From IMG/VR virus record IMGVR_UViG_3300037502_002993, positions 62,001-126,000 of that record: a DNA stretch of 64,000 nucleotides. One strand, 5' to 3'. A program made the position numbers and the translations under genes. Shown here one piece after another: positions 5,980 through 56,209 of the stretch; within the stretch, counting starts at the first letter, position 1, and every line of letters begins with the position of its first letter. Under the pieces are notes generated by a model that was given only the letters and a program-made list of their open reading frames with translations, was not told where the DNA came from and searched no databases.

Positions 5980-6737
5980 TAGGTAATGAGTTCCAACACC
6001 GGACGCCAGCTGTTGTAGCTGTTAGTGGCGGTCGTGGACGCGTCATTCGCGGTGGCGGCATTAAAAGCAATCCCCGATGCACCACCATACCGAACTCGGT
6101 TAGACGTGCTGGCAGCTACTGTCTCAACTGCCCAAGGCCACCGTGGACTACTGACTGTCCCACCACCACCAATAGATTCAGCGCTATAAGAAGCTAACTC
6201 ACCATTGAGAAGTTTTACAAAGACGTTAGTTAATTCACCACCTGCCCCGCTTTCAGGGTTGGTATTTGATGCATACAGCAGGCGAGAGCTAAAAGTTGCC
6301 TCGCCAATTATTAACTGAGTGCCATGCACCGCACCGGCCACGTTAATGGAATTCCAAGAAATTCCTCCACGAATGGGTTTTTTTGCAATGTAGAGTATTT
6401 TATTATAACTAGCGACTTTAAGCCAAGCAGATTCGGCATTATTAATCAGTGTCCCAGCACTCACCCCTAGGACACTGCTTAGATCTGAATAACTGATGAA
6501 CTCCTCCGGCCCAATTTCCCCGTAAAACCCCGCCTGTTCGTCTCCCGCGATTAACTCAGTTGGCCCTGGCCCTGTGATGGGAACATACGCCCGTTCTCCT
6601 AGACACTCAAACCCACCATGAATTCCATCCAAATGAAACCGTAAGGCTTTCTTTTCTAAATCAACGGAGAGCATTCCTTCGGGGAGCGCCAAGGCGTTGT
6701 TAAAGGTCGTATCACCGTGGATTAACTTAGTCTTCAT
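5979..6737 (-). CDS. Mtd-like tail receptor-binding protein (Mtd_N-like N-terminus, CLec-like C-terminus)
   Basis: N-terminus resembles the BPP-1 Mtd N-domain (..VD..K...R....GGF). Shares GFYGE...WLK...LYIAKKP...SW and terminal WRPVLEL with ORFs 53278-54207 and 54218-55111. Confidence 0.65.
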   Translation of the reverse strand: MKTKLIHGDTTFNNALALPEGMLSVDLEKKALRFHLDGIHGGFECLGERAYVPITGPGPTELIAGDEQAGFYGEIGPEEFISYSDLSSVLGVSAGTLINNAESAWLKVASYNKILYIAKKPIRGGISWNSINVAGAVHGTQLIIGEATFSSRLLYASNTNPESGAGGELTNVFVKLLNGELASYSAESIGGGGTVSSPRWPWAVETVAASTSNRVRYGGASGIAFNAATANDASTTATNSYNSWRPVLELIT

Positions 6738-30686: not shown

Positions 30687-31904
30687 TCAAGCAGTGAGGT
30701 GGTGTTCTTGGATGAACACCGCTGTGAGTGTTTGTCTTAAATGACTGGTGGGCGGTAGTTGTTCCAGAGCCATGGTCCTTAAGTTGATGGCCGCGTTGTG
30801 ATCGCGATCATGCGTGGTCTTGCAAGAAGGACAATCCCACCAGCGTTGGTGTAGCTTGAGCTTCAGTTTCCCCTCTAAACGATGGTTACACGCACTGCAG
30901 GTCTGAGTACTGGGAAAGAATCGTTCCGCAATGACGACCTTGCAGTGCTGTGACTCATCGGCCTTGTAGACCAACTGAGTCAGGAACTGCCGCCATCCAC
31001 AATCAGCAATGTGTTTAGCGAGTCTCCTGTTCCTGACCATACCCTCAATATTGAGGTCCTCAATAGCAATAGTCATGCATTGGTCTACAAGGCTTCTAGA
31101 AAGCTTGTGCTGAAAGTCCATCCGACACCGCTTGGTTTTTGCGTATATCTTGGCGACTTTCAGCCTCTGCTTTCTGTAGTTGGCACTGCCTTTGACTTTG
31201 CGTGATAGATCGCGCTGTGCCCTCGCCAGTTTCCTGGCATACTGCCCTTGGTATTTGGGTTTGGCATACTCCTTCCCTTCTGAGTCTACCGCAAAGGTCT
31301 TAATCCCTAAGTCCGATCCCAAATGAGACTCCCCATTCGTGAGTCGAGGTTCACATTCACAAATGAAACAAGCATAATACTTACCATCAGACTCACGAAT
31401 GATACTACAGGAAGAAGGTTGGGTGGGGAGTACCCCACCCCATTTCTCGTTCTTGTAACTCCATTTAGTTTTGATGGGGGACTGCATGACTTTCGCCATG
31501 CGGAAATCCCCTGTTTCTAGATTTAAAGTAAAAGCAGCCTTCGTCAGTCGGATGGACTGACGACTGACCCGCTTCTTGTACTTGGGAAATCCAATCTTCC
31601 CTTTCCCTTTGAAAAAGGATTGGAAAGCAGTCCCTAGGTCCCGTAGGGACTGCTGTAGGATGACGGATGAAACCTCATAGAGAAACCCAAACTCATCTTT
31701 TAGTTCGGGAAGACGGTAGGTGAGTGCATTTGCACTCAGTTTGGGTTTCTCTAATGTTGGGTCCGTCTGGTAGGCTTTGTATTCCTCTTGTACCCTACCC
31801 AGTACCTGATTCCAGACAAACCGTTTACAGCCAAACGACCTCACCAGGAGGTCAGTTTGCATGGCATTCGGATAGATCCGAAAACGAAATGTTTTCGTTG
31901 CCAT
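30687..31904 (-). CDS. tnpB: TnpB RNA-guided endonuclease (IS200/IS605 family)
   Basis: FRFRIYPN...FGCKRFVWN N-terminus, RuvC-I GSDLG, RuvC-II IEDL, zinc finger CSAC/CPSC and RuvC-III DRDHNAAINL. All three catalytic residues are present. Confidence 0.95.
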   Translation of the reverse strand: MATKTFRFRIYPNAMQTDLLVRSFGCKRFVWNQVLGRVQEEYKAYQTDPTLEKPKLSANALTYRLPELKDEFGFLYEVSSVILQQSLRDLGTAFQSFFKGKGKIGFPKYKKRVSRQSIRLTKAAFTLNLETGDFRMAKVMQSPIKTKWSYKNEKWGGVLPTQPSSCSIIRESDGKYYACFICECEPRLTNGESHLGSDLGIKTFAVDSEGKEYAKPKYQGQYARKLARAQRDLSRKVKGSANYRKQRLKVAKIYAKTKRCRMDFQHKLSRSLVDQCMTIAIEDLNIEGMVRNRRLAKHIADCGWRQFLTQLVYKADESQHCKVVIAERFFPSTQTCSACNHRLEGKLKLKLHQRWWDCPSCKTTHDRDHNAAINLRTMALEQLPPTSHLRQTLTAVFIQEHHLTA

Positions 31905-31984
31905 GGTTGGCCTCCTGGGGAAATGAGTTAGTGTATATGTTAGTATTTAATGGTCTCTCACCAGGCGGGGTCTGGTGATGCAAA

Positions 31985-32899
31985 TCATCCTCCACCTGAA
32001 GGAGGAGGCTTTATGACCACTGGGTAACCTGACGTTTGGTTGGGATCGGCATCACGCAGCGGGGGTTTCTTTTGTGTAATGATCTTGGGTAATGTTTTAA
32101 CTAACACCTTTTCCATTTTGGTTCTTGGTTTGCCAATGGCTTTCAGCCACTCTTCTGGCGTAAGGTTCCTTTTTATTGAATTACAGGTCTGGCAGGATAG
32201 AGTGGCGTTAACTTCTGAGTTAGATCCACCCCTAGACTTGGGGATCTTGTGCTCCCATTGGAGAATTTTATCCCCACTAACTCCAAGGCAGTATTGGCAC
32301 GTATGGTTGTACCTGTAGAGTAGATACTCACGCATCTCGGTACCGAAGAGCCTGCCCTTCTGATATTCTTTGTCTTTGATACCAGGATTCTTCAGTAAGT
32401 GGGTATCAAACTTTACCTCTTCGACCTTGGCGCTGGTGATGGGACACCAGCGCATGAAGCGATCGATCCAAGTCTGGGTAGTGAGTGCTCGATGTTGGAT
32501 GGAGGGTGGAAGCCACCCTTTAGGTCTAGCGCGGTTCAAGAACCGCGCGGGACGATACCGGGTTTTCCTAGAACGACGAGATCGGCGATACATTGCTCGG
32601 CTAGCCAAACGCTTACGGATCACCTGACCGCGATGCACTAGGTTAATTCCTAACACGCATCGGTCCCCTCGCTTATCGTGAGAGATCACGGCAATCCCGG
32701 TGGTCTTCGAACCAGGATCAATCTGAATGGAAAAGTTATTCCTGATTGGTCCTTTCGGGACATAGTTCAGAATGATAATGAATGGGTACCGTCGGAAGAC
32801 GGCGGCTTTGCCCTTGCGTAACAATTCCCGAGCACGTGCTGGATGACACGGTGCTAAAGGAATTCGATTGGCGTCTAGCACCAATACGTAATTTGACAT
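31985..32899 (-). pseudogene. iscB: IscB (RRXRR/HNH) endonuclease, C-terminally truncated
   Basis: PLAP-C motif, RuvC-I IDPGSK, RRSRRSRKTRYRPARFLNR, RuvC-II E, and HNH EHKIPKSRGGSN...CQTCN. Homology stops at PLRDA (~32048), before RuvC-III and the TAM-interacting domain. Confidence 0.85.
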
Positions 32900-33153
32900 G
32901 ATTTAGGTTTCCCTAATAGTCTACTCGGGTTCAAGACCCTTGTGTTACGTGAACCTCGACAATGTTCAAAAGGCTTGTCATGCACGCCGCACCGCCCCTA
33001 CCTCACAGGACTTTTAACGACGCACCTTAGAGCCAGGGGCTGGTTCGGCCACCCCTGGGTAAGATCACCTAATGAACGGAGTCCCTGTTAGGGGACAGAG
33101 TCTGGTCAGCATTCCCGGAAGGGGACTCCAAGTTGATGGAGGGTGTTACTGAC
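32900..33153 (-). ncRNA. IscB omegaRNA (5' guide from flank 33154-33170)
   Basis: Upstream of iscB. Contains GTCAGTAAC start, TGACCAGACT, CCAGCCCCTGGCTCT and AACATTGTCGAGG blocks typical of IscB omegaRNAs. Confidence 0.75.
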
Positions 33154-43519: not shown

Positions 43520-44521
43520 TTAGGCAGCGGCCGGCGTGTACAGATACTGGACTTGTACCTGGAAGCCATCCCACTCGTCCACTTCGTCGGTCTCGACAGT
43601 GAATTCATTGTCGTTGACAGTAGCGGCGAGGGTGGCATCGTAAGCCACGGTACCATCGGTATCGGTGAAGAAGTAACGAACAGTCGCGTGATTCATGATG
43701 CCGCCGATACCGCCCTTCGGCGGATGGGTAAGGGTGATGGTGGAACCACTCACGGTGAGAGTTTCCAACAGCGGTACGGCACCGCCATTCCGGGCGGCCT
43801 CATCGGCGTAGGCCTTCACAGCCGCGGCAGAAGGGGCGTTGTCAGTGGGGGCGGAAGCCTCCAAATCTTGTTCCAGTCCAGCCTTGAGTACCGCATCATC
43901 CAGATCGATCCCCTGGGTGACGGTAATGAAATCCACCTTGGCCTTATGGGCGTCAGTGAAGGCATTGGTGTTTTCGTTGGACTCATAGGCCTCTTTGATA
44001 GAGAGGGCGCTGATGGAGTGCTCAAGGGCGTCCTGGTCGGAGAGCTTGATCCAGTCTGTGACCACACCGTCTTCGATAGCGTAGGGCTTGTACATCGCCC
44101 ACTTACCATCACCGTCGTCCGCCACAAAGATACGGTCAGCAGGATCGAGGTTCTCCAGGGCGTCACGCTCGGTGATGTCAGCGACGTTGTAGTTGGTGCC
44201 GAGGGCCAGCCCTGCGTCCAGAATGGCCTGGTCAACCTCTTCGGTGGAGTAAACGTCGATATTGGTGCGCGCTTGCTCGACATTGTCCAGGTCTGCCAGG
44301 TTCTGGGAAATCTGGAGGGCGGCCTCAGAGCCGCTCTGTGCGCTGCCCAGGACCTCGTTAATGGCACCCACTAGGGTAGCCTTCTCCTCGGTGAGAAGTT
44401 CGCTCAGATCGCCGTCTGCGGCGGCACGCGCCTGGGATTCCGAAGAGATGTCGTTGGCGAGCTGCTGAAGGGTCAGGTTCAGACCCAGGATGGTGTTCTT
44501 ACTGCGCTTAATAATAGCCAT
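43520..44521 (-). CDS. Acidic tail-fibre/virion protein (paralogue 1)
   Basis: ISQNLADL repeat; alignable over its full length with 44582-45637. Confidence 0.65.
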   Translation of the reverse strand: MAIIKRSKNTILGLNLTLQQLANDISSESQARAAADGDLSELLTEEKATLVGAINEVLGSAQSGSEAALQISQNLADLDNVEQARTNIDVYSTEEVDQAILDAGLALGTNYNVADITERDALENLDPADRIFVADDGDGKWAMYKPYAIEDGVVTDWIKLSDQDALEHSISALSIKEAYESNENTNAFTDAHKAKVDFITVTQGIDLDDAVLKAGLEQDLEASAPTDNAPSAAAVKAYADEAARNGGAVPLLETLTVSGSTITLTHPPKGGIGGIMNHATVRYFFTDTDGTVAYDATLAATVNDNEFTVETDEVDEWDGFQVQVQYLYTPAAA

Positions 44522-46219: not shown

Positions 46220-49200
46220 TCAGTTGCCAACAGTCCCTTCGTCATTGACCCAATCCTGAAGGGTTTCGTCGTAGTAGATCCCCATCTCCGCAAAGAGATC
46301 CGCCATGGACTTCGCTGACATCAGGGCGTTGTCATCGGGTTCGACACTACGCACATCCGCAGGAGCGGCTTTGTTGACTTTCACCCACGCATTGCGCTTT
46401 CTGAGGTGGAGTTCTTCCGCGTCTGCTTCAGAGACATCCGGTACCTCAGCGACAGGCAGTGCCCAGCCACCGTCCTGACGAACGTACTGCTGGCCGTCAA
46501 TCGGAGCTTCTGGTACTTCCGCAGTTGGTCTCACCCACTCGCCATCTTTGAGCAGGTATTCCTGACCATCCATGGGTGCGCCAGCCAGGGCATCAAGCAC
46601 CTGCCACTGACCGTCCTTGTAGACGTACTGCTCACCGTCAGCGGGGGGAGCGTAGACATTACCCCCACCCAGATGACCCATTGATGCCCAGGTGGTGTTG
46701 GACGTTTTCTGGAAGTACTCATTGCTGGTGGTGTTGATGGCAAAGTCCCCTACATCCCCCACAATCTGAGTTGGGTTCTGAGGCAGGGCAATCCAGCGTG
46801 AGCCATTCAGGGAGTAAAGCCACTCTTCGACGGTGCCTTCGTAACCAGCCTCAACAGCGACCTGGTAAGCCGACAAACCTTCAGGCCCCCGCATGGATTC
46901 CATCCATTCCTCAAGGGTTCCTGAGAAACCGAGTTCATCCACAGCGATCTGGTAGGCATTCTTCCCTTTCAGGGATTCCAGCCACTCCGCTTCAGTACCA
47001 GTGAAGCCCAGATCAACCGCCTCCTCATAGGCACTTTTACCAGTGTCACCCTTCTCCCCCCGATCTCCAGTGTCACCCTTCTCCCCCTTGGGACCGCGAA
47101 TGGGACCGAGGTTAATCCACCCCCCCTGGACTTCAGACCACATCCAAACATCCTGGTTGACAACGTAGGCCTCACCCTGGAAGTTACCCGGAGTGGGAAG
47201 ATCCTCGAAAGAAGGCAACTCCCCTTGAAGGTCCACAGGCACGGCATTGTCGCCCGGTTCACCTTTTAGAGAGTCAAGCCACTCTGATGGGGAGCCGGTG
47301 AAACCTTCGTTGACGGCTACCTGGTAAGCCGAGAGGCCCTCGGGTCCCACCAGACTCTCAAGCCACTCTGTCTCCGATCCAGTGAACCCCTGAGACACGG
47401 CCAGATCGTAAGCGCTATCCCCTTGGTCGCCTTTGAGTGACGCCAACCACTCCTGTTGGGTACCGCCAAAGCCCTCACTTACGGCAACCGCGTAGGCACT
47501 TTCACCAGGTTCCCCCTTCAAGGAGTTGAGCCATTCGGTCTCGGTACCGACGAACCCATTGAGGAGCGCCACCTCATAGGCCGAGTCGCCCCGAGCCCCC
47601 TTCAAGGAGTCAAGCCACTCTTGTTCAGTCCCCACAAAGCCCAGGTCCACGGCGACCTCGTAAGCAGACTTCCCTTGGATGGACTCCAACCATTCGGCTT
47701 CAGTTCCCTGGAACCCGTTGTCAACAGCAACATCGTAAGCAGAGCGTCCATCCTCACCCCGATCGCCCTTCTCTCCTTTTTCCCCTTGGGCGCCTTTTAC
47801 CTCACCCAAGTCGATCCAGGCATTGCCATTCCATGCGTAGAGGTTTTGACCCACCAGATAACCCTGGCCCAGTTCCCCTTCAGGCGGGAGTTCAGACGGG
47901 TCATCTGCCCCCCCCATAATGGAGAGGTTAGCACCGGGAGGGCCCTCAGGGCCCACTTCGCCCTGATTGCCCTTCTCTCCTTTCTCCCCCTTCAAGGACT
48001 CCAACCATTCCCCACGGGTCCCGGTGAAGCCTTCGGCCTGAGCGACCGCAAACGCATCCTCACCTTTCAGGGACTCAAGCCATTGCCCCTCGGACCCCAC
48101 AAAACCGTTCTCTACAGCAAGCTGATAAGCGCTCTGCCCCACCAGGGAGTTGAGGTACTCCTCTTCCGTTCCTTCGAAGCCATTATCCACCGCGAGTTGA
48201 TAGAGATCTCGACCCACGATGGTACCAGCATCCTGCCACTCTCCAGCCGTCTCAGAGTAGATCCACAATACCCCATTGATAATGTAGGCTGAGAACTCAG
48301 ACACCTCAGGAAGTTCAGACGGATCGGAGAGTACTCCAGTAATAGTCAGGCCATCTCCTTTTGGACCGGGGTTACCGCGATCCCCTTGCGGACCTTTGAG
48401 AGACTCCAACCATTCGGCTTCTGTACCGACGAAACCACTCTGAAGGGCAATCTCGTAGGCACTGGCTCCGTTGAGACTGTCGAGCCAAGCGGTTTCATTT
48501 CCTACAAAACCGTGGTCCACCGCAACGTCGTAGGCGGATTTACCATTCAGGGTGGCCAGGTACTCAGACTCGGTCCCTTGGAACCCATTCTCTACGGCAA
48601 CCTCATAGACGGACTTACCGTCTGCCCCACGCAGTGAAGAGAGCCATTCGGAACGACTGCCGTTAAAGCCATCGTCCAAGGCGACCTCGTAAGCAGACTT
48701 ACCACGCTCACCCTTATCACCGGTATCGCCAGTGTCACCCTTCTCACCTTGGGGGCCCACGACCTCACCGGCATCAAACCAGTCTTCCCCAGTCCAGACC
48801 CAGAGATTACGAACGATAAAGTAAGCATCACCCGGCTCAGCCCCGCCCGGTAGATCGACCTCATCGTTAACTTCTCCCAGAACCTTAATGGCCGCACTGG
48901 GGTCGCCCTTCTCCCCTTTCTCCCCCTGAATGCCCGTATCACCCTTAGGACCCACCAGGGAGTCAAGCCATTCCCCACGGGTACCAGTGAAGCCTTCTTG
49001 GGTGGCAACGGTGTAGGCATCGTTTCCTTTGAGGGAGGTAACCCACTCACTGCGGGTGCCTTGGAAGCCTTGGTCAACGGCGATTTGGTAAGCGTCTTTC
49101 CCCACCAGTGACGCAAGCCACTGCGTTACCGTACCGGAGAAACCTTCCTGCACGGCAAGTTGATATGCAGAGCTCCCTTTCAGGGAATTGAGCCATTGGT

Positions 49201-50125
49201 TCAGTGTACCTTGGAACCCCTGCTGGACAGCAAGCTGGTAAGCGTTCTGACCTGCCGGACCCACTTGACCGACGGGCTCCCATCCTTGACCTTCCCATAC
49301 CCACATCTTGGAATTGATGATGTAGGCATCACCTGCACTGTTGCCTGTCATCGGCAGGAGGGCTTCATCCTGGAAGGACCCGAGAATACGAAGGCCATTA
49401 CCTGCTTTACCCTTCAAGGAATCAAGCCACTGCTCTTCGTTCCCTTCAAAACCATTGCGTTGTGCTACCTCAAAAGCACTTTCACCGCGCTCCCCTTTAA
49501 GGTCCTCTAGCCACTCTTCTACAGTGCCCTCGAAACCTTCCTCGACGGCAATATCGAAGGGGCTCTTGCCTTCTGGACCACGAAGAGACTCTACCCACTC
49601 CTCCTCCTCACCGTCAAAACCAAGCTCAACAGCAATCTCGAAAGCAGACTTACCTTTGAGGGAATCAAGCCAGGTAGTTTCATCTCCCTCGAAGCCGTTC
49701 TCCTGCGCGACCTCAAAGGCAGACTTTCCTTCTGGTCCAACAAGACTGTCAAGCCACTCTTGTTCATCTCCAGTAAAGCCGTTTTCTACCGCAACATCAA
49801 ACGCGGAGCTACCGACCAGGGTGGCGAGCCAGTCTACCTCTGAACCACCGAAGCCTTGTTCCACCGCCACCTGATAGGCGGATTTGCCTTCTTCACCAGG
49901 TTCCCCTTTCAGGGAGTCGAGCCATTCTTGTTTTGTACCAGTAAACCCTTCTTCTACGGCCAGCTCATACGCAGAAGCGCCATCCTGACCGATGGCGACA
50001 AGCTCATCAGGAGACAAGCGCATGTTCTGCCAGGGATCTTGAGGGGACGCGCGGTGGATGATCTCAATCCACACGTCCCCTGTGAGTTGGTTTAAAATAT
50101 CAAACGATGAAGTTCTTCCCGCCAT
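46220..50125 (-). CDS. Collagen-like repeat tail-fibre protein
   Basis: Many SAY(E/Q)xAVxxGFxGTExEWLxSLxG repeats interleaved with Gly-X-Y stretches, Trp-rich modules and C-terminal APxDGxxYxxKDGxW repeats. Confidence 0.8.
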   Translation of the reverse strand: MAGRTSSFDILNQLTGDVWIEIIHRASPQDPWQNMRLSPDELVAIGQDGASAYELAVEEGFTGTKQEWLDSLKGEPGEEGKSAYQVAVEQGFGGSEVDWLATLVGSSAFDVAVENGFTGDEQEWLDSLVGPEGKSAFEVAQENGFEGDETTWLDSLKGKSAFEIAVELGFDGEEEEWVESLRGPEGKSPFDIAVEEGFEGTVEEWLEDLKGERGESAFEVAQRNGFEGNEEQWLDSLKGKAGNGLRILGSFQDEALLPMTGNSAGDAYIINSKMWVWEGQGWEPVGQVGPAGQNAYQLAVQQGFQGTLNQWLNSLKGSSAYQLAVQEGFSGTVTQWLASLVGKDAYQIAVDQGFQGTRSEWVTSLKGNDAYTVATQEGFTGTRGEWLDSLVGPKGDTGIQGEKGEKGDPSAAIKVLGEVNDEVDLPGGAEPGDAYFIVRNLWVWTGEDWFDAGEVVGPQGEKGDTGDTGDKGERGKSAYEVALDDGFNGSRSEWLSSLRGADGKSVYEVAVENGFQGTESEYLATLNGKSAYDVAVDHGFVGNETAWLDSLNGASAYEIALQSGFVGTEAEWLESLKGPQGDRGNPGPKGDGLTITGVLSDPSELPEVSEFSAYIINGVLWIYSETAGEWQDAGTIVGRDLYQLAVDNGFEGTEEEYLNSLVGQSAYQLAVENGFVGSEGQWLESLKGEDAFAVAQAEGFTGTRGEWLESLKGEKGEKGNQGEVGPEGPPGANLSIMGGADDPSELPPEGELGQGYLVGQNLYAWNGNAWIDLGEVKGAQGEKGEKGDRGEDGRSAYDVAVDNGFQGTEAEWLESIQGKSAYEVAVDLGFVGTEQEWLDSLKGARGDSAYEVALLNGFVGTETEWLNSLKGEPGESAYAVAVSEGFGGTQQEWLASLKGDQGDSAYDLAVSQGFTGSETEWLESLVGPEGLSAYQVAVNEGFTGSPSEWLDSLKGEPGDNAVPVDLQGELPSFEDLPTPGNFQGEAYVVNQDVWMWSEVQGGWINLGPIRGPKGEKGDTGDRGEKGDTGKSAYEEAVDLGFTGTEAEWLESLKGKNAYQIAVDELGFSGTLEEWMESMRGPEGLSAYQVAVEAGYEGTVEEWLYSLNGSRWIALPQNPTQIVGDVGDFAINTTSNEYFQKTSNTTWASMGHLGGGNVYAPPADGEQYVYKDGQWQVLDALAGAPMDGQEYLLKDGEWVRPTAEVPEAPIDGQQYVRQDGGWALPVAEVPDVSEADAEELHLRKRNAWVKVNKAAPADVRSVEPDDNALMSAKSMADLFAEMGIYYDETLQDWVNDEGTVGN

Positions 50126-51685: not shown

Positions 51686-52441
51686 TTATTCGCCAGGAAG
51701 TTCAGCGGCCATGAGGTCTTGATACGCAGACATGAAGGCCTCTGCCAGATCAAGTTCCTGGAGTTCTTCTTCGGTCTCTGCTGCACTGATCAGGTTTTCA
51801 TCCACCAGACGCTCTGCGGAGAAGGAGACCTGCACGTGTGCGGAGGCGAACTGGGCGATCGGGGCGATCTCCTCAAGGGTCACCGCCACCCAACCGGACG
51901 GGGACTTCCAGTCAACGGAACTACGAAGCCCCTCCTTCAGGGTGTTATAAGCATTCCCCAGCTGGGATTGGGATTCCCGCGTGGTGATGACCTTTACCCC
52001 GGTGGGGGTTTCCACACCACCAGTCTCATGGGCAAACCGGACGGCGGCCAGGGCTTCACGCTTGGCTGTTTTAATACGCGCCATACGGGCCTCAGAGACC
52101 TCAGGAGCGTCCTTCAGGGCTTCCAGGTAGGGTACGGTAGACTCTGCCTCTACCACGCCGTACTGGACGTAATCGGAGACCTGAGAAAGATGCTCTTCGG
52201 TAAGGTCTTCCTGACCATTAACTTCATCCAGACGCGCTTGCTGTGCTTCAGTCAGCACAAGGGGTTTGAAGGACAGGCGGTCGTGGTGCCACCACTTGTT
52301 GACAAAGTCACGCCAGTACTGTTCGGTGTCATCGAACTTGACGCGCTTCTCATCACGGTCAAAGAAAGTCGCCTGAAGACGCTTGGGTTCAAACTGCTCG
52401 GTTTCAGCGTTGAACTTGAGGAAAAGGTCGTGCTGTGACAT
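51686..52441 (-). CDS. DUF4376-like tail-fibre assembly chaperone
   Basis: RFAHETGGV...TTRESQ...WK...GWV...VQVSFSAE motif. Start moved to MSQHDLF. Confidence 0.65.
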   Translation of the reverse strand: MSQHDLFLKFNAETEQFEPKRLQATFFDRDEKRVKFDDTEQYWRDFVNKWWHHDRLSFKPLVLTEAQQARLDEVNGQEDLTEEHLSQVSDYVQYGVVEAESTVPYLEALKDAPEVSEARMARIKTAKREALAAVRFAHETGGVETPTGVKVITTRESQSQLGNAYNTLKEGLRSSVDWKSPSGWVAVTLEEIAPIAQFASAHVQVSFSAERLVDENLISAAETEEELQELDLAEAFMSAYQDLMAAELPGE

Positions 52442-52581
52442 GGGCAAGCTCCTAGGGTTTGCGGGATAACACCACGTCGAGGATGCGTGGTGGGGCTTGG
52501 CCTTACAGGCCTCATACTGTAAAGTGGTTATACGGTACGGCATAGCTGCCGCCCAAAGGCGGCCATTATTAATTACCTAAT

Positions 52582-52667
52582 TTAACGTTCCAGGGCTTTA
52601 CTATCACCACAGTTACCCGACAGACCAGTATTACCACAGTTCATACGCAGGTTTCAGACACCAACGC
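52582..52667 (-). repeat. Degenerate DGR template-repeat remnant
   Basis: TGGTGTCTGAAACC..CGTATGAACTGTGGTAATACTGGTCTGTCG aligns with the 3' variable region of 53278-54207 (TGGTGTCAGGAAACC..CGCGTGTATCGTGGTAATTCTGGTGTTACG). Starts about 20 nt after the avd stop. Confidence 0.5.
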
Positions 52668-52686
52668 AAAGTGATATCTCCAATAC

Positions 52687-53034
52687 TCACCTGTCTATAA
52701 TGGCAGTAGTGCCATTGGAGATATCGCTCAATCGACGACTCAACAGGGTGTGAAACTCAATAGAGATGTATTCGTAACGCTTGGCGGTTTGAAAAAGAGC
52801 GGCTAAAAAGTAACACTTACCCCTCACTTCTTTGATGGCGCTGGTGAAATCACGAAGATTACTTTGATAGGGGGCGCTTAAGAGTTTTCCCATGATTTCC
52901 CACAGTGTCAGTTTGATCTGGTTAACAAGAGTCGCCCTCTCTGACCGAGGGAAGTTCTTAAGTGAAGGAACGACCTCGTCAAATAGCATTTCGGTCTGAC
53001 GCATCAAGGTCAGACATTTATCCTCATAATACAT
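52687..53034 (-). CDS. avd: Avd-like four-helix-bundle protein (DGR accessory)
   Basis: 115 aa, helical, with the NFPRSERATLVNQIK motif. Lies directly downstream of an Mtd/CLec-like gene. Confidence 0.65.
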   Translation of the reverse strand: MYYEDKCLTLMRQTEMLFDEVVPSLKNFPRSERATLVNQIKLTLWEIMGKLLSAPYQSNLRDFTSAIKEVRGKCYFLAALFQTAKRYEYISIEFHTLLSRRLSDISNGTTAIIDR

Positions 53035-53277
53035 TCGATATTGCCTTTTTATAGATGGACAATTACATCTTATTATTTAATTGAGTATTTTTTAACTGAG
53101 GTTGGGACCCATGTCCAGGCGTTACTGTACTAAGGGTCCCAACGTACTTACACCTGTAGCTTATTCGGCCTGAAAGGCCAAAGCGGCACGCCCCCACTGG
53201 TGGGCGGTCCGTGTGACGGTGGCGTTATACCGGCACGAGGACTGCACGCCTCCATCGGTGAGCGGTGTGAGTGCCCA

Positions 53278-54207
53278 TCAGTTGTCTAAGATGGGGACGA
53301 GTACCGCTCTCCAACCGAAAAGCGAACCCGCAGACGAAGAGGTAGCGCGAGACAAGTGCGTAACACCAGAATTACCACGATACACGCGCTGGGTGCTGGT
53401 GGCGGGGGTTTCCTGACACCAGTTGGCGCGACCATTGTCGGTACCACGCAATACCAGATCCGCGTCACTGTACTGCGCCCAGCTCCCGAAGGGGGCGGCC
53501 GTGGGGTCGGTGTGCACCGTGGGGTTACTGGTGTCGGTGTGCACACCGGAGTGGATGGGGTACAGTAACCGGTTCCACTCCGACCCATGAGTGGTGGGGA
53601 TGTCCCAGCCCCCGGCATCGGTGGTGGGGTCGGAGGCAGCACCGCGCAGCAGGCGGACTTTAAACTTGTCCAAAAAAACCGATTCTACAACCGGGGCATT
53701 TGCCCCACCATAGACCGCATTGCGGGCGTTAATCTGGTCCCATGAAATAGTGTGGCGGTGAGGCCTCTTTGGTACAAAGAGCGTCTCCCCTCCCAGGTTG
53801 AATTTCAGATACGGAGTATCTGAGTTAAATGCCACACCTGCCGTCAGTCCGATCTTTGCCGCAAGCTCTACCCCATCCATTAACTCACTAGCCAATACCT
53901 CACCGTAGAAGCCCGCGCGGTGATCCCCAGCGATCAATTCTTGAGGACCTGGTCCTGTAAGGATAGGAAGGGCCTTTACCCGTTGTATCCGACTGAAGGC
54001 GCGATCATTCCCTTTAAAACTCTCCAGCAGGTAATAATACTCTTCTCCGCGGGATACCGCCTCATCGCGAAACTGGGTGCTCTCCGCATCGATCTCCGCA
54101 TACGCCTCACTGGGCAGACTGTCGGCATCAAACGGAGTGGCGCTACGCCACACGCGAATGCCATCGTTATTCAGGTTGCGATTGGTAAACCGTAAAGTTA
54201 CAGACAT
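53278..54207 (-). CDS. Ig/FN3-like plus CLec-like receptor-binding protein (putative DGR target)
   Basis: C-terminal WCQE...RVYRG...GWRAVL variable-region architecture; paralogous to 5979-6737 and 54218-55111. Confidence 0.65.
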   Translation of the reverse strand: MSVTLRFTNRNLNNDGIRVWRSATPFDADSLPSEAYAEIDAESTQFRDEAVSRGEEYYYLLESFKGNDRAFSRIQRVKALPILTGPGPQELIAGDHRAGFYGEVLASELMDGVELAAKIGLTAGVAFNSDTPYLKFNLGGETLFVPKRPHRHTISWDQINARNAVYGGANAPVVESVFLDKFKVRLLRGAASDPTTDAGGWDIPTTHGSEWNRLLYPIHSGVHTDTSNPTVHTDPTAAPFGSWAQYSDADLVLRGTDNGRANWCQETPATSTQRVYRGNSGVTHLSRATSSSAGSLFGWRAVLVPILDN

Positions 54208-54217
54208 GTTATCATCC

Positions 54218-55111
54218 TCACGTTAAAAGGGGGGCGTCTGACCAGTTGAAATCATAAATCGTGACAGGTTTTACGTAGTCTGTGGTGTACCAGAGGTTCT
54301 CTAACGGGAACAGAAGATCCTCCAGTGAGATCAGCTCTAACACAGGACGCCAACCTAAGGCAGTTCCCGCACTACTGTTAGCGCTACTGCCGTACGTCGT
54401 GGCATTACTTCCCCCTCGGGTGACACGTGAGGCACTGGCCCCCACCACACTCTCCTGCATCCAACACTGACTGCCATTCCCCGTCAGGCCGAGGTCCGCA
54501 TTACTGAGTGAACCAAGAGATACATCTCCATCACCAGTCGCGGCTACCGCGTTAATCAAGCGGTCCCACTCTCCACCACGTCCATTGGAGGGGTCAGCAT
54601 CACCCCCCGTTAGTAGCCGTAACTTAAAGGCGTAGTTGCCTTTGATCAAGGGGATCAACTGAAGCGTCTCTTCCACCACGGGGTTAGTACCCACGCCACT
54701 TACCCCGTAAACCGCTCCAGCCTGATAAAGCGTCGCCCAACTCACCGAGTGCATGATGGGTTTCTTGGCCACGTACAGGATACGGCCCTGACTGGCAAAC
54801 TTCAACCAGTTCTCGTCACTGTTAATCCCCACCCCACTGGAAATCCCTACTTCAGCAATCAACTCACTTCCCGTAAACAGGATATTGGGTGATACCTCAC
54901 CCAGATACCCCTGTGAGCCAGTTCCTGAAAGAAACTCCTGACCACCGGGTCCTAAATCAAACGCCCGACGACTGGGGAGTTCAAAGCCTCCCTGCGTTTC
55001 TCCATCATAAAACCGTACGGTTTTCTTCTGCACATCTACCGCAATCTGTCCCTTGGGTAAGTTCAAGGCATCAAGCTGTGATGTTGTCCCTCTTAGGTGT
55101 CGTGTTCTCAC
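54218..55111 (-). CDS. Mtd-like receptor-binding protein (Mtd_N plus CLec-like)
   Basis: RHLRGTT...IAVD..KKTVRFYDGETQGGF N-terminus and WMQE...RG...GWRPVLEL motif. Confidence 0.65.
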   Translation of the reverse strand: MRTRHLRGTTSQLDALNLPKGQIAVDVQKKTVRFYDGETQGGFELPSRRAFDLGPGGQEFLSGTGSQGYLGEVSPNILFTGSELIAEVGISSGVGINSDENWLKFASQGRILYVAKKPIMHSVSWATLYQAGAVYGVSGVGTNPVVEETLQLIPLIKGNYAFKLRLLTGGDADPSNGRGGEWDRLINAVAATGDGDVSLGSLSNADLGLTGNGSQCWMQESVVGASASRVTRGGSNATTYGSSANSSAGTALGWRPVLELISLEDLLFPLENLWYTTDYVKPVTIYDFNWSDAPLLT

Positions 55112-55122
55112 GATAACCTCCG

Positions 55123-55707
55123 TTAGTTAACACTACCTTCTTCCAACAGGCGATATTCTCCATTTTCCATCAAACGTGGTTCACCGTCTTCCAAGAGGCG
55201 GGCATTAAATGGAACTACACTCCCCTCACCAAATACAATTCTTATATCAACATAGCTGTACCAGACATAAGAGCCCGGTAGGGCAGTTAAGCGGTATAGG
55301 GTTTCTGTAGCGTCTTCATCGGGACGGATTGTTTGATCACTGAACTCAACATCAGTGGGTTCCAGGTAGAGACGATAACGATCGTTCAATACCCCGATAA
55401 GTTCCGTTTTGGTGATCTCTGACACATCGCTCGGGAGCAAAAGATCAACATGGCCCGTATCGCCCACCTCCATGGCAGTTGCCAGTGATAAGCGACGATA
55501 GAAAAAGGGCTTTTTCACCCCCAGATCCCGATTGTACACCTCAATAAAAGTACGGCCTGGATTGCCCACCATGGGCACATGCATGAGTTCACGAAACTCC
55601 ACATTGCTCTCATACACCCGCCAATGGGGCTTCGAGGCCTGCACCAAAGTAATCAAAGCCTGTAGAGAAGGACGATCATACGGAAAGCGGTCTGCGGAAA
55701 GCGGCAT
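55123..55707 (-). CDS. Probable virion/baseplate protein
   Basis: Start moved to MPLSADRFPY (GAGGA RBS). FFYRRL...LN.RY.L.LEPTDV pattern. Confidence 0.55.
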   Translation of the reverse strand: MPLSADRFPYDRPSLQALITLVQASKPHWRVYESNVEFRELMHVPMVGNPGRTFIEVYNRDLGVKKPFFYRRLSLATAMEVGDTGHVDLLLPSDVSEITKTELIGVLNDRYRLYLEPTDVEFSDQTIRPDEDATETLYRLTALPGSYVWYSYVDIRIVFGEGSVVPFNARLLEDGEPRLMENGEYRLLEEGSVN

Positions 55708-55765
55708 GGGAGGTGTCCTCGTTAATGGGGAAAATCTCGCAGTCATACCATCCGAGTACGGACTC

Positions 55766-55948
55766 TTAGGTACACGGCGGTGTATACGCCAACACGAAGT
55801 AACTCCCAGTCGTACCGCAGTGAAGCATGCGGCATAAATGAAATCCCCGCCCCAGTGCTCCTCGTTGGAGTGGGGCAGGGAAACTCCCGCTAGGGAGTGA
55901 GTGGTACTTAATCGTACACTTGGGAGTGGGGGTCGGTTGTGGGTCCAT
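55766..55948 (-). CDS. Possible small Cys-containing protein
   Basis: 60 aa with a strong GGAGG RBS. Confidence 0.35.
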   Translation of the reverse strand: MDPQPTPTPKCTIKYHSLPSGSFPAPLQRGALGRGFHLCRMLHCGTTGSYFVLAYTPPCT

Positions 55949-56209
55949 ACACCTCCCTTATAAGGTGCGGTGCCCAAGGGCAACACGCATGACCACCGTG
56001 ACGTATCAATAGCACTGCTGAATAACTCCTGTGATGACCCCCCGATCGATATCCACAGCAGAACCAACAGTACCTGACATGCCATGAGCCAAAACAGTGA
56101 CTTTAGAAGAGTGCTCAGGGCTTACTCCTCTCTTTATTGAAGACTCCGGTAGCCCTCAACATCTTATTACCTGTCTCAGTAGTGTTTAGCCACCACCTGC
56201 ATGGGTGAG

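What the first reader, a model, noticed from the sequence alone, without database searches (positions are those of the whole stretch)
52540..55111. Decayed diversity-generating retroelement: Mtd-like targets, avd and a template-repeat ghost, no RT
Seen: two CLec-like receptor-binding genes (one with an Mtd_N-like start) are followed by an Avd-like ORF. Next is an ~85-bp non-coding stretch that aligns to the 3' variable region of 53278-54207. In the best 37-nt block there are 10 mismatches, 3 of them at template adenines, and a further TGGTGTC..AAACC match lies upstream. A terminator and a chaperone gene sit where the RT would be. Known: target-avd-TR-RT is the BPP-1 DGR order. Inference: the phage once hypermutated its host-range proteins. 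The RT was lost or acts in trans, while avd stayed open and may have been repurposed.
Basis: partly seen in the sequence, partly recalled or inferred. Interest (0 to 1): 0.65.

Follow-up and report, generated by a model that had tools for sequence, protein, structure and literature searches.

The report
Broken hypermutation cassette in jumbo phage
A nucleus-forming jumbo phage carries the remains of a diversity-generating retroelement: its reverse transcriptase and most of its template are deleted, but it had already rewritten the tips of five scattered virion proteins, and these now look frozen as five different variants.

Summary

- **Avd:** the 115-aa ORF at 52687-53034 (-) is an Avd by weak HMM hits, a four-helix fold like bAvd, and its context.
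- **Template stump:** window 52624-52686 is the 5' stump of a template repeat (TR). A 95%-identical avd on a 601-nt ENA contig is followed by an intact TR, and contigs from two other runs also run from 52624 into that TR. In this phage homology stops at 52624. A 180-nt unique filler and a DUF4376 gene follow.
- **No RT:** no reverse transcriptase was found anywhere in the 220.6-kb genome.
- **Five targets:** the 3' end of gene 53278-54207 has four more copies in the genome, all outside the window. The five variable regions differ almost only where the relative's TR has adenine: 18 of 19 A columns vary against 5 of 60 non-A columns (p = 2e-12).
- **What the targets are:** FGE-type C-lectin-fold proteins of the phiKZ gp083 family. 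The genome encodes a homolog of the nuclear shell protein chimallin.
- **Gene 54218-55111** is a paralog without a TR-matched variable region.

Verdict: a real, recently disabled, five-target DGR in a chimallivirus. It is a new member of a known kind.

The parts
54218..55111 (-). Paralog of the target family (297 aa). It has a 'RGTTSQL...DGETQGGFE' N-terminus and a C-lectin-like C-terminal motif plus a ~30-aa extension. It has no TR-matched variable region and is not a current DGR target.
   Evidence: ORF. PHROG 1062 E 4.7e-42. 42-43% aa identity to copy B. 40-44% nt identity to the five copies in the VR segment. No blastn copy of its 3' end elsewhere in the genome.
53278..54207 (-). DGR target gene 'copy A' (309 aa), a virion structural protein of the phiKZ gp083 / PhiPA3 gp080-082 family with an FGE-type C-lectin C-terminal domain.
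   Evidence: PHROG 1062 E 3.6e-50. (homology to PhiPA3 gp080/081). (fold of paralog B, which is 87% nt-identical to A over the 270 nt before the VR).
53311..53389 (-). Variable region (VR) core of copy A, 79 nt, running from GCGCGTG... to ...GGTTGG. It is one of five VRs in the genome.
   Evidence: Differences among the five copies sit at codon positions 1-2 of NNT/NNC codons. 18 of 19 adenine columns of the relative's TR vary, against 5 of 60 non-A columns (Fisher p = 2.1e-12).
53260..53311 (-). [quoted passage not shown] It may be the IMH-adjacent hairpin or cruciform. It belongs to a ~100-nt 3' flank that is identical in copies A, B and C.
   Evidence: The function is inferred only.
52687..53034 (-). 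avd (accessory variability determinant), 115 aa, open reading frame.
   Evidence: the only bAvd match in the genome. (fold). (a 95%-identical homolog directly followed by an intact TR). (29 synonymous / 5 non-synonymous codon differences).
52624..52686 (-). 5' stump of the template repeat and its leader. It is 55/63 identical to the relative's avd-TR spacer and TR start. Only 52624-52649 lies within the repeat shared with the VR. The deletion breakpoint is at 52624/52623.
   Evidence: Contigs of X3 and X9 match down to 52624 and then continue into the intact TR.
52444..52623 (-). 180-nt filler unique to this lineage, sitting where the rest of the TR, the spacer and the RT should be. It contains a GC hairpin at 52545-52563.
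   Evidence: no other copy in the genome. (relatives diverge at 52624 and again at 52443)..
51686..52441 (-). DUF4376 / 'tail fiber' PHROG gene immediately downstream. Its true start is probably the ATG at 52441 (preceded by TAGGAG), not the one at 52543.
   Evidence: Homology to the X9 relative starts exactly at 52443.

Best explanation
This locus is the control cassette of a diversity-generating retroelement (DGR) that has been disabled by a deletion.

**What the ancestor did.** The order was target - avd - TR - (spacer - RT). An error-prone RT copied the TR transcript, misincorporating opposite template adenines. The cDNA replaced the ~80-nt variable region at the 3' end of five paralogous virion-protein genes, one next to the cassette and four others 22-71 kb away. 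This rewrote about 9-10 AAY-type codons on the ligand-binding face of an FGE-type C-lectin domain.

**What happened in this phage.** A deletion or replacement removed everything from 26 nt into the TR up to the start of the next gene. What remains is avd, a 63-nt stump and 180 nt of unrelated filler. With neither RT nor usable template, the five variable regions can no longer be rewritten by this phage. They persist as five fixed, different binding-site variants.

**Shown:** the Avd identity, the breakpoint, the intact TR in relatives, the adenine-specific variation pattern, the absence of an RT, and the fold.

**Inferred:** that the relatives' TR is followed by an RT, that the proteins bind host receptors, and that the deletion is recent.
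For: - **Five near-identical 3' modules.** blastn finds them at 85-91% identity. Differences are confined to codon positions 1-2 of specific NNT/NNC codons, with the intervening codons identical.
- **The inferred template was later found.** A template inferred from these copies, with A at every hypervariable column, turned up almost letter for letter downstream of a 95%-identical avd on ENA contig L028. 18 of 19 TR-A columns vary against 5 of 60 non-A columns, p = 2e-12.
- **Breakpoint.** The window is colinear with L028 through avd and 63 nt beyond, then diverges. Logan contigs of X3 and X9 have loose ends at 52624 that read straight into the intact TR. A 2248-nt contig of the source run X1 bridges the deleted form with 0 differences at depth 86.
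- **No RT.**. Only one avd in the genome.
- **The family is a real DGR target elsewhere.** A 26-kb phage contig (L009) has a 40%-identical C-terminal domain followed by avd, TR and an RVT_1 RT. Its TR-VR pair has 15 A and 5 non-A mismatches, and its TR shares a 23-mer with this TR.
- **Folds.**
Against: - No RT was actually seen next to the intact TR in the close relatives. L028 ends 122 nt after the TR repeat and the Logan contigs are short.
- The Avd HMM scores are below Pfam's curated cut-off.
- A few non-A differences exist among the VRs (5 of 60 columns), and three are shared by all VRs against the relative's TR.
- Copy E's 3' flank resembles the TR's flank rather than that of copies A-D, which the simple IMH/IMH* model does not predict.
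- CheckV rates the record 74% complete, and its 120-nt terminal repeat lies in a repeated IscB-associated RNA. A missing genome segment therefore cannot be strictly excluded, although the cassette itself is contiguous and truncated.
- Contigs cannot show whether rare variants still arise in the VRs.
Confidence: 0.85

Rival explanations
1. The DGR is still active in trans. The five variable regions keep their acceptor signals and are rewritten during co-infection by a related phage (or another element) that supplies RT, Avd and TR RNA. The deleted genotype would then be a 'free-rider'.
For: Relatives with an intact TR of matching sequence exist in at least three other datasets. avd is intact with mostly synonymous differences. 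The VR 3' flanks with their inverted repeats are conserved. DGR homing to non-adjacent targets is known (PMC5758913).
Against: No intact-TR allele appears among contigs of the source run X1 or of X2, with no loose end at 52624. Co-infection inside one phage nucleus would be needed. There is no evidence of current variation.
Confidence: 0.08
2. There was no retroelement history. The five C-terminal modules are ordinary paralogs under diversifying selection at binding-site codons, and the short match after avd is chance.
For: Related chimalliviruses carry 3-11 paralogs of this family with no RT and no Avd. The paralogs of the nearest one (G001) show no homogenised VR.
Against: The variable columns coincide with adenines of an independently found TR (p = 2e-12). 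Third codon positions and intervening codons are invariant. The stump is 55/63 identical to the relative's TR leader and outscores 99.8-100% of genome windows.
Confidence: 0.02
3. The missing RT/TR is an assembly artefact. The repeats (five VRs plus the TR) collapsed, and the cassette is intact in the real genome.
For: Repeats do break assemblies here, as shown by the many short contigs over 53100-53700. The record's 'terminal repeat' lies in a repeated element.
Against: An independent Logan contig of 2248 nt bridges 51700-53129 with no differences at the same depth as its neighbours. X2 carries the filler (52336-52610) as well. The 180-nt filler is unique sequence, not a repeat junction. No RT-like reading frame exists anywhere in the 220 kb.
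Confidence: 0.05

Closest known systems
Bordetella phage BPP-1 DGR (mtd - avd - TR - brt)
   Same: The gene order is target-avd-TR. The VR sits at the 3' end of a C-lectin-fold tail or virion protein. Variation is adenine-specific at AAY codons. Avd is a four-helix bundle (TM 0.80 to 4dwl). Mtd variants are the top Foldseek hits for the target model.
   Different: There is no RT and the TR is truncated. There are five targets rather than one, up to 71 kb from the cassette. The targets are 273-309 aa proteins of a chimallivirus paralog family with no sequence-level match to Mtd. The host virus is a ~220-kb phage that encodes chimallin.
Treponema denticola DGR (TvpA and up to seven non-adjacent targets)
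   Same: One TR serves several dispersed targets. The VR domain is an FGE-type C-lectin fold (TvpA 2y3c, Z 7.9).
   Different: The Treponema element is cellular and complete. According to PMC5758913, phage-associated DGRs mostly have a single target, and non-adjacent targets are nearly always within 50 kb.
Intact DGR on IMG/VR contig 3300007790_000293 (L009; low-GC phage, target 538 aa - avd - TR - RT)
   Same: The target's C-terminal domain is homologous (40% aa). Its TR shares the 23-mer AATACCTC(G/T)TCGAATACGAATTC with this system's TR. It has an Avd of the bAvd family.
   Different: It is complete and has a single target, in a small unrelated phage. Its RT has no counterpart in the window's genome.
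phiKZ gp083 / PhiPA3 gp080-082 / 201phi2-1 gp452, gp456 'virion structural protein' paralog family of Chimalliviridae
   Same: The five targets and gene 54218-55111 belong to this family: 26-41% aa identity to PhiPA3 gp080/081 and multiple copies per genome.
   Different: None of the seven large relatives searched (G001-G007) has an RT, and none of the five searched for Avd (G001-G005) has one. The nearest one searched (G001) lacks homogenised VRs. No paper in the library links DGRs with Chimalliviridae. A survey of 224 jumbo phages reported no FGS/C-lectin DGR-type domains (PMC7824862).

Membership tests
Diversity-generating retroelement (complete, autonomous) | A DGR-clade reverse transcriptase encoded in the element | tested here: not met
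   RVT_1 gives no match at E <= 10 in the 220,598-bp genome, while the control genomes do give matches. phmmer --max and tblastn with the L009 DGR RT give a best E of 7.
Diversity-generating retroelement (complete, autonomous) | A template repeat matching the VR with mismatches at TR adenines | tested here: inconclusive
   In this genome only a 63-nt stump remains (26 nt inside the repeat), so the feature is not met as a functional TR. Using the intact TR of the 95%-Avd relative, 18 of 19 A columns vary among the five VRs against 5 of 60 non-A columns, p = 2e-12. Past membership is therefore shown, but not present membership.
Diversity-generating retroelement (complete, autonomous) | An accessory protein Avd (four-helix bundle, bAvd / 23S_rRNA_IVP family) next to the TR | tested here: met
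   Pfam bAvd E 1.5e-5 (below the cut-off) and PHROG Avd E 5.6e-8. AF2 pLDDT 91 with four helices. TM 0.80-0.87 to 2gsc, 4dwl and 8ub7_E. The homolog is followed directly by a TR.
Diversity-generating retroelement (complete, autonomous) | A VR at the 3' end of a target gene encoding a C-lectin (or Ig) fold binding surface | tested here: met
   The VR core lies 31-109 nt upstream of the stop codon. The paralog B model has pLDDT 86. The top Foldseek hits are Mtd and TvpA. VIA gives Z 6.5-8.1 to PvdO, TvpA, Mtd and the FGEs, all from one superfamily. These Z values are middling.
Diversity-generating retroelement (complete, autonomous) | IMH at the VR end, IMH* at the TR end, and a GC-rich inverted repeat downstream | tested here: inconclusive
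   TR and VR homology ends at GGTTGG for copies A-D. Copy E shares 17 more nt with the TR flank. Inverted repeats follow each VR, but their role is untested.
Diversity-generating retroelement (complete, autonomous) | Ongoing adenine-specific variation within a population | not testable with these tools
   All runs are held as contigs, which drop rare variants.
Chimalliviridae (nucleus-forming phiKZ-like jumbo phages) | Chimallin (nuclear shell protein) and the syntenic core genes | tested here: met
   tblastn with PhiPA3 proteins: nuclear shell protein 35% identity over residues 21-602, E 2.5e-99. DNA polymerase 52%. The split RNAP beta subunits, the helicase and gp062-064 are all found in conserved order. 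A neighbouring gene carries DUF7941, reported as chimallivirus-specific (preprint 10.64898/2026.04.21.720040).
Mtd_N-type N-terminal domain | A match to the Pfam Mtd_N model or a sequence-level match to Mtd | tested here: not met
   No Pfam family at E <= 1 for either gene. The A3 profile finds no PDB sequence at E <= 1. VIA aligns model residues 3-276 to Mtd, but at rmsd 9.3.

The most novel reading that the evidence does not exclude
Chimalliviruses can host a working multi-target DGR, one that rewrites five dispersed virion-protein genes inside the phage nucleus. This lineage is a natural RT/TR knock-out. Either it has locked in a five-member panel of binding specificities, or it still has its intact acceptor sites rewritten in trans by co-infecting RT-bearing relatives (a DGR 'free-rider').
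Probability: 0.12. Interest if true: 0.8.

Novelty: new member of a known kind. Interest (0 to 1): 0.58.

Why it matters
- **First DGR link to this phage family in the searched literature.** DGRs are the only known natural system of targeted protein hypermutation in prokaryotes and their viruses. I found no report of one in nucleus-forming jumbo phages. A survey of 224 jumbo phages reported no DGR-type C-lectin domains (PMC7824862).
- **What this locus shows.** The multi-copy phiKZ gp083-type virion proteins have that fold. In at least one chimallivirus lineage, five of them were DGR targets served by one template. That is more targets, and more widely spread, than is usual for phage DGRs (PMC5758913).
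- **A natural experiment.** Intact-TR alleles (three datasets) and the deleted allele (this phage) allow a comparison of host-range plasticity with and without hypermutation.
- **A pointer to host recognition.** The result marks these small proteins, encoded beside a DUF7941 fibre gene, as likely host-recognition parts of chimallivirus virions.

Tried and rejected
- blastn of the locus against GenBank phages found no match.
- Searches for Avd relatives with more flanking DNA came back empty: the search for related loci in viral contigs and in metagenome contigs. The word-index protein search found only one relative, on a 601-nt contig, and its cluster has no further members.
- An exact 27-mer of the TR found nothing in viral, metagenome or genome contigs. 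A degenerate 23-mer found only the L009 contig. I therefore could not obtain a close relative's contig that reaches the RT.
- I checked whether the 505-aa ORF beside copy B could be a hidden RT. It is an RNase H protein.
- I checked whether the filler at 52444-52623 was copied from elsewhere in the genome. It was not.
- I checked whether the paralogs of the nearest large relative (G001) share homogenised VRs. They share only ~75-85 nt around their stop codons.
- A profile search of the target family against PDB sequences found no match.
- One call was wasted on an alignment with a single sequence, one on a frame-shifted reference and one on an over-long fold input.
Full report
**Anatomy of the locus**

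All genes here run on the minus strand:
- 55123-56085: a DUF7941 protein.
- 54218-55111: 297 aa.
- 53278-54207: 309 aa, called 'copy A' below.
- 52687-53034: 115 aa.
- 52544-52686: a stretch with no long ORF.
- 51686-52543: a DUF4376 protein that hits a PHROG 'tail fiber' family.
- Further downstream: a DUF1353 protein (PHROG 'tail assembly chaperone'), an N-acetylmuramidase endolysin, and a 1301-aa collagen-like fibre protein.

The window is bases 62001-126000 of a 220,598-bp IMG/VR virus record.

**Avd**

The 115-aa ORF hits Pfam bAvd (E 1.5e-5, 25.9 bits against a 40-bit cut-off), 23S_rRNA_IVP (E 2.2e-4) and PHROG 3206 'Avd protein of DGR' (E 5.6e-8). It is the only bAvd-like frame in the genome.

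Its AF2 model has pLDDT 91 and four helices. It superposes on the Avd-family structures 2gsc and 2rld (TM 0.74-0.87), on BPP-1 bAvd 4dwl (TM 0.80, rmsd 1.8) and on the Avd chain of the DGR ribonucleoprotein 8ub7 (TM 0.80).

**The decisive observation lies outside the window**

A blastn of the last 223 nt of copy A against the whole genome found four further copies at 85-91% identity. They lie at genome 137054-137276 (+), 151452-151673 (-), 172349-172554 (+) and 43874-44074 (+). Each forms the 3' end of a 273-278-aa paralog, called B, C, D and E.

In a codon alignment, the ~30 codons before GGTTGG show a striking pattern. About ten codons differ among the copies at positions 1 and 2 only (NNT/NNC), often with three or four different bases. 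The codons in between are identical, third positions included. This is the footprint of adenine mutagenesis at AAY codons.

From these copies I inferred a template with A at every hypervariable column. No sixth, template-like copy exists in the genome.

**The template exists in close relatives, at exactly this position**

The only close Avd homolog in the 5.8-billion-protein index is 95% identical and sits on a 601-nt ENA contig (ERZ27247961, k141_435736; locus L028). Aligned to the window, L028 is about 90% identical through avd and for 63 nt past its stop codon. It then continues into a sequence that matches my inferred template almost letter for letter, with AAT/AAC at every hypervariable codon. 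The window diverges completely at that point.

Using L028's TR, 18 of 19 adenine columns vary among the five VRs, against 5 of 60 non-adenine columns (Fisher p = 2.1e-12). Three further non-A differences are shared by all five VRs, so they separate the two lineages' templates rather than the VRs.

**Independent support from public runs**

- Contigs of X3 (freshwater, 2018) and X9 (2025) match the window from avd down to position 52624. They then run on for 193 and at least 255 nt. The adjoining 30 letters are the reverse complement of the intact TR.
- A 2248-nt contig of X1, which may be the source sample, bridges 51700-53129 with no differences at depth 86. The deleted form is therefore real.
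- X2 (same study as X1) carries the filler as well, in a contig over 52336-52610.
- X9 diverges again at 52443, two bases upstream of an internal ATG at 52441 that has a good ribosome-binding site. The real start of the DUF4376 gene is therefore probably 52441.
- It follows that 52444-52623 is a 180-nt filler private to this lineage. It has no other copy in the genome.

The ghost is genuine, but only 52624-52686 is template-derived. That stretch is 55/63 identical to L028, and only 52624-52649 lies inside the TR/VR repeat.

Scored against the inferred TR, the 143-nt intergenic stretch beats 99.8-100% of 6102 genome windows and at least 99.85% of shuffles. It scores higher against the inferred TR than against VR A itself.

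The hairpin at 52545-52563 has its T-run on the plus strand, so it is a doubtful terminator for avd.

**No reverse transcriptase**

RVT_1 finds nothing in the genome, even at E <= 10, while the control genomes do give matches. phmmer --max and tblastn with the RT of a related DGR give nothing better than E 7. A 505-aa ORF beside copy B is an RNase H protein, not an RT.

**How complete is the genome?**

CheckV estimates 74%. The record's 120-nt 'direct terminal repeat' recurs, inverted, at genome 94954. It lies inside a HEARO RNA upstream of an IscB-like RRXRR-HNH gene. Joining the contig ends rebuilds a second intact copy of that element, so a closed or circularly permuted genome is plausible but not proven.

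Whatever the answer, the cassette itself is contiguous and truncated.

**What the targets are**

An AF2 model of paralog B (21-sequence alignment, pLDDT 86) finds the five Mtd variants first in Foldseek (E 8.5e-5 to 1e-3), then TvpA, PvdO and formylglycine-generating enzymes. VIA-align gives Z 8.1 (PvdO), 7.9 (TvpA), 7.0 (Mtd) and about 6.5 (FGEs) over residues ~55-275. Each Z value is middling on its own, but every hit belongs to the FGE / C-type-lectin superfamily, which is the canonical DGR scaffold. Residues 1-55 resemble collagen XV/XVIII trimerisation domains (Z 5.7-5.9). There is no sequence-level match to Pfam or to PDB sequences.

By tblastn the family is the multi-copy 'virion structural protein' family of phiKZ-like phages: PhiPA3 gp080-082, phiKZ gp083 and 201phi2-1 gp452/456, plus Erwinia and Salmonella jumbo phages.

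The genome encodes a chimallin homolog (35% identity to PhiPA3 gp053, E 2.5e-99) and syntenic phiKZ-type polymerase, helicase and split RNAP genes. It is therefore a chimallivirus.

The paralogs are mosaics. Copy A is only 46-49% nt-identical to B-E in its N-terminal part, but 87-91% identical over the 270 nt before the VR. The VR-bearing module therefore seems to have spread among paralogs by recombination, which would explain how one template came to serve five genes.

Gene 54218-55111 is a more distant paralog (40-44% nt identity to the five copies in the VR segment) and is not a TR-matched target.

**Relatives**

- Seven large related phage records (164-287 kb) were searched for an RT and none has one.
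- Five of them (G001-G005, 231-267 kb) were also searched for Avd and for the target family. They carry 3-11 paralogs and no Avd.
- The paralogs of the nearest one share only short 3'-terminal similarity, not homogenised VRs. The DGR is thus a lineage-specific acquisition.
- A 26-kb low-GC phage contig (L009) has a complete cassette: a 538-aa target with a 40%-identical C-terminal domain, a bAvd (E 2e-16), a 108-nt TR/VR pair with 15 A and 5 non-A mismatches, and an RVT_1 RT. Its TR shares a 23-mer with this system's TR. That points to common ancestry of the cassettes across very different phages.

**Mechanism and state**

- **Shown:** the adenine-specific footprint in five VRs, the intact template in relatives, the breakpoint at 52624, and the absence of an RT.
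- **Inferred from established DGR biology** (PMC5758913): the TR RNA was reverse-transcribed with misincorporation opposite A, and the cDNA replaced each VR up to the GGTTGG boundary. Inverted repeats follow each VR and may be the cruciform that aids homing.
- **Current state:** without RT and template the system is dead in cis. The five VRs differ at 18 of 19 template-adenine positions and all the reading frames are open. The phage therefore retains five distinct binding variants.
- **avd:** it remains open, with 29 synonymous and 5 non-synonymous codon differences from the relative. That interval includes time before the deletion, so it does not prove a new role.
- **Dating:** the small number of non-A changes in the VRs is compatible with a recent loss, but I cannot date it.

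**Unexplained**

Copy E shares 17 nt of 3' flank with the TR rather than with copies A-D, yet its VR is as diversified as the others.

**Comparison and novelty**

This is a DGR of the BPP-1 type by order, Avd, scaffold and mutational signature. It fails present-day membership on the RT and the full TR.

In the searched library I found no paper linking DGRs with Chimalliviridae. A comparative study of 224 jumbo phages states that no FGS (C-lectin, DGR-type) domains were found in jumbo phages (PMC7824862). A survey of DGRs reports that phage-associated DGRs mostly have one target and that non-adjacent ones are nearly always within 50 kb (PMC5758913). Here there are five targets, up to 71 kb from the cassette.

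A 2026 preprint on phage Goslar proposes that DUF7941 proteins form host-recognition filaments at the peripheral baseplate (10.64898/2026.04.21.720040). The DUF7941 gene directly upstream of this locus fits a host-recognition module, but the role of the five proteins is untested.

I rate this a new member of a known kind, of moderate to good interest.

Noticed in passing
window 30687-33153 (-); genome 1-120 = 220479-220598, inverted copy at genome 94954-95073: An IscB-like gene (RRXRR + HNH, 304 aa, 31985-32899) is preceded by a HEARO / omega-type RNA (32944-33153, 120 bits against a gathering score of 83) and followed by a TnpB (OrfB_IS605 + Cas12f1-like TNB, 30687-31904). A second IscB-like copy spans the record's ends. 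The 120-nt 'direct terminal repeat' that IMG/VR used to call the ends lies inside this RNA.
   Followed up: partly
window 53181-53277 and L002:4277-4374, L003:3354-3451 (3' flanks of copies A, B, C): About 100 nt downstream of the stop codon is identical in three of the five target genes. Part of it recurs, inverted, after copy D. It folds into paired hairpins (z -3.0 for copy A). It could be a homing signal, a terminator or a regulatory element.
   Followed up: partly
L005:4045-4090 (copy E, genome ~44060-44090) against L028: Copy E's sequence after GGTTGG (CGTGCCGCTCT...) matches the 3' flank of the relative's TR rather than the flank shared by copies A-D. E also has an in-frame 3-nt deletion in its VR. 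It might be the original cognate VR or the result of a longer conversion tract.
   Followed up: no
L009:9105-9212 against L028 TR: The TR of an intact DGR in a small low-GC phage shares a 23-mer, and the overall codon layout, with the TR of this high-GC jumbo-phage lineage. This suggests horizontal spread of the VR/TR module.
   Followed up: partly
window 46220-50125 (-): A 1301-aa protein is built of ~25-aa 'SAYEVAVENGFxGTExEWLxSLKG' repeats interspersed with collagen-like GxY runs. It has weak Fibritin_C similarity near its C-terminus and is probably a long fibre.
   Followed up: partly
L002:4972-6489 (-) = genome 137972-139489: A 505-aa protein with an N-terminal RNase H domain (E 1.6e-25) lies beside target copy B. 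It may correspond to the RNase H-clamp protein described for Chimalliviridae in PMC13648698, which I did not read.
   Followed up: no
window 55123-56085 (-): The gene directly upstream of the two paralogs carries DUF7941 (E 6.7e-9). A 2026 Goslar preprint assigns this domain to filament-forming, baseplate-associated host-recognition proteins.
   Followed up: partly
window 5985-6569; genome 4028-4588 and 4797-5225: There are three further, more distant paralogs of the target family (26-32% aa identity to PhiPA3 gp080/081), bringing the family to at least nine genes in this genome.
   Followed up: no
window 52441-52543: The longest ORF of the DUF4376 gene starts at 52543. Relatives' homology and a TAGGAG ribosome-binding site point to the ATG at 52441 instead. 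The upper 34 codons lie in the lineage-specific filler.
   Followed up: partly
run X9: One run holding an intact-TR relative is filed under a named organism rather than a metagenome.
   Followed up: no
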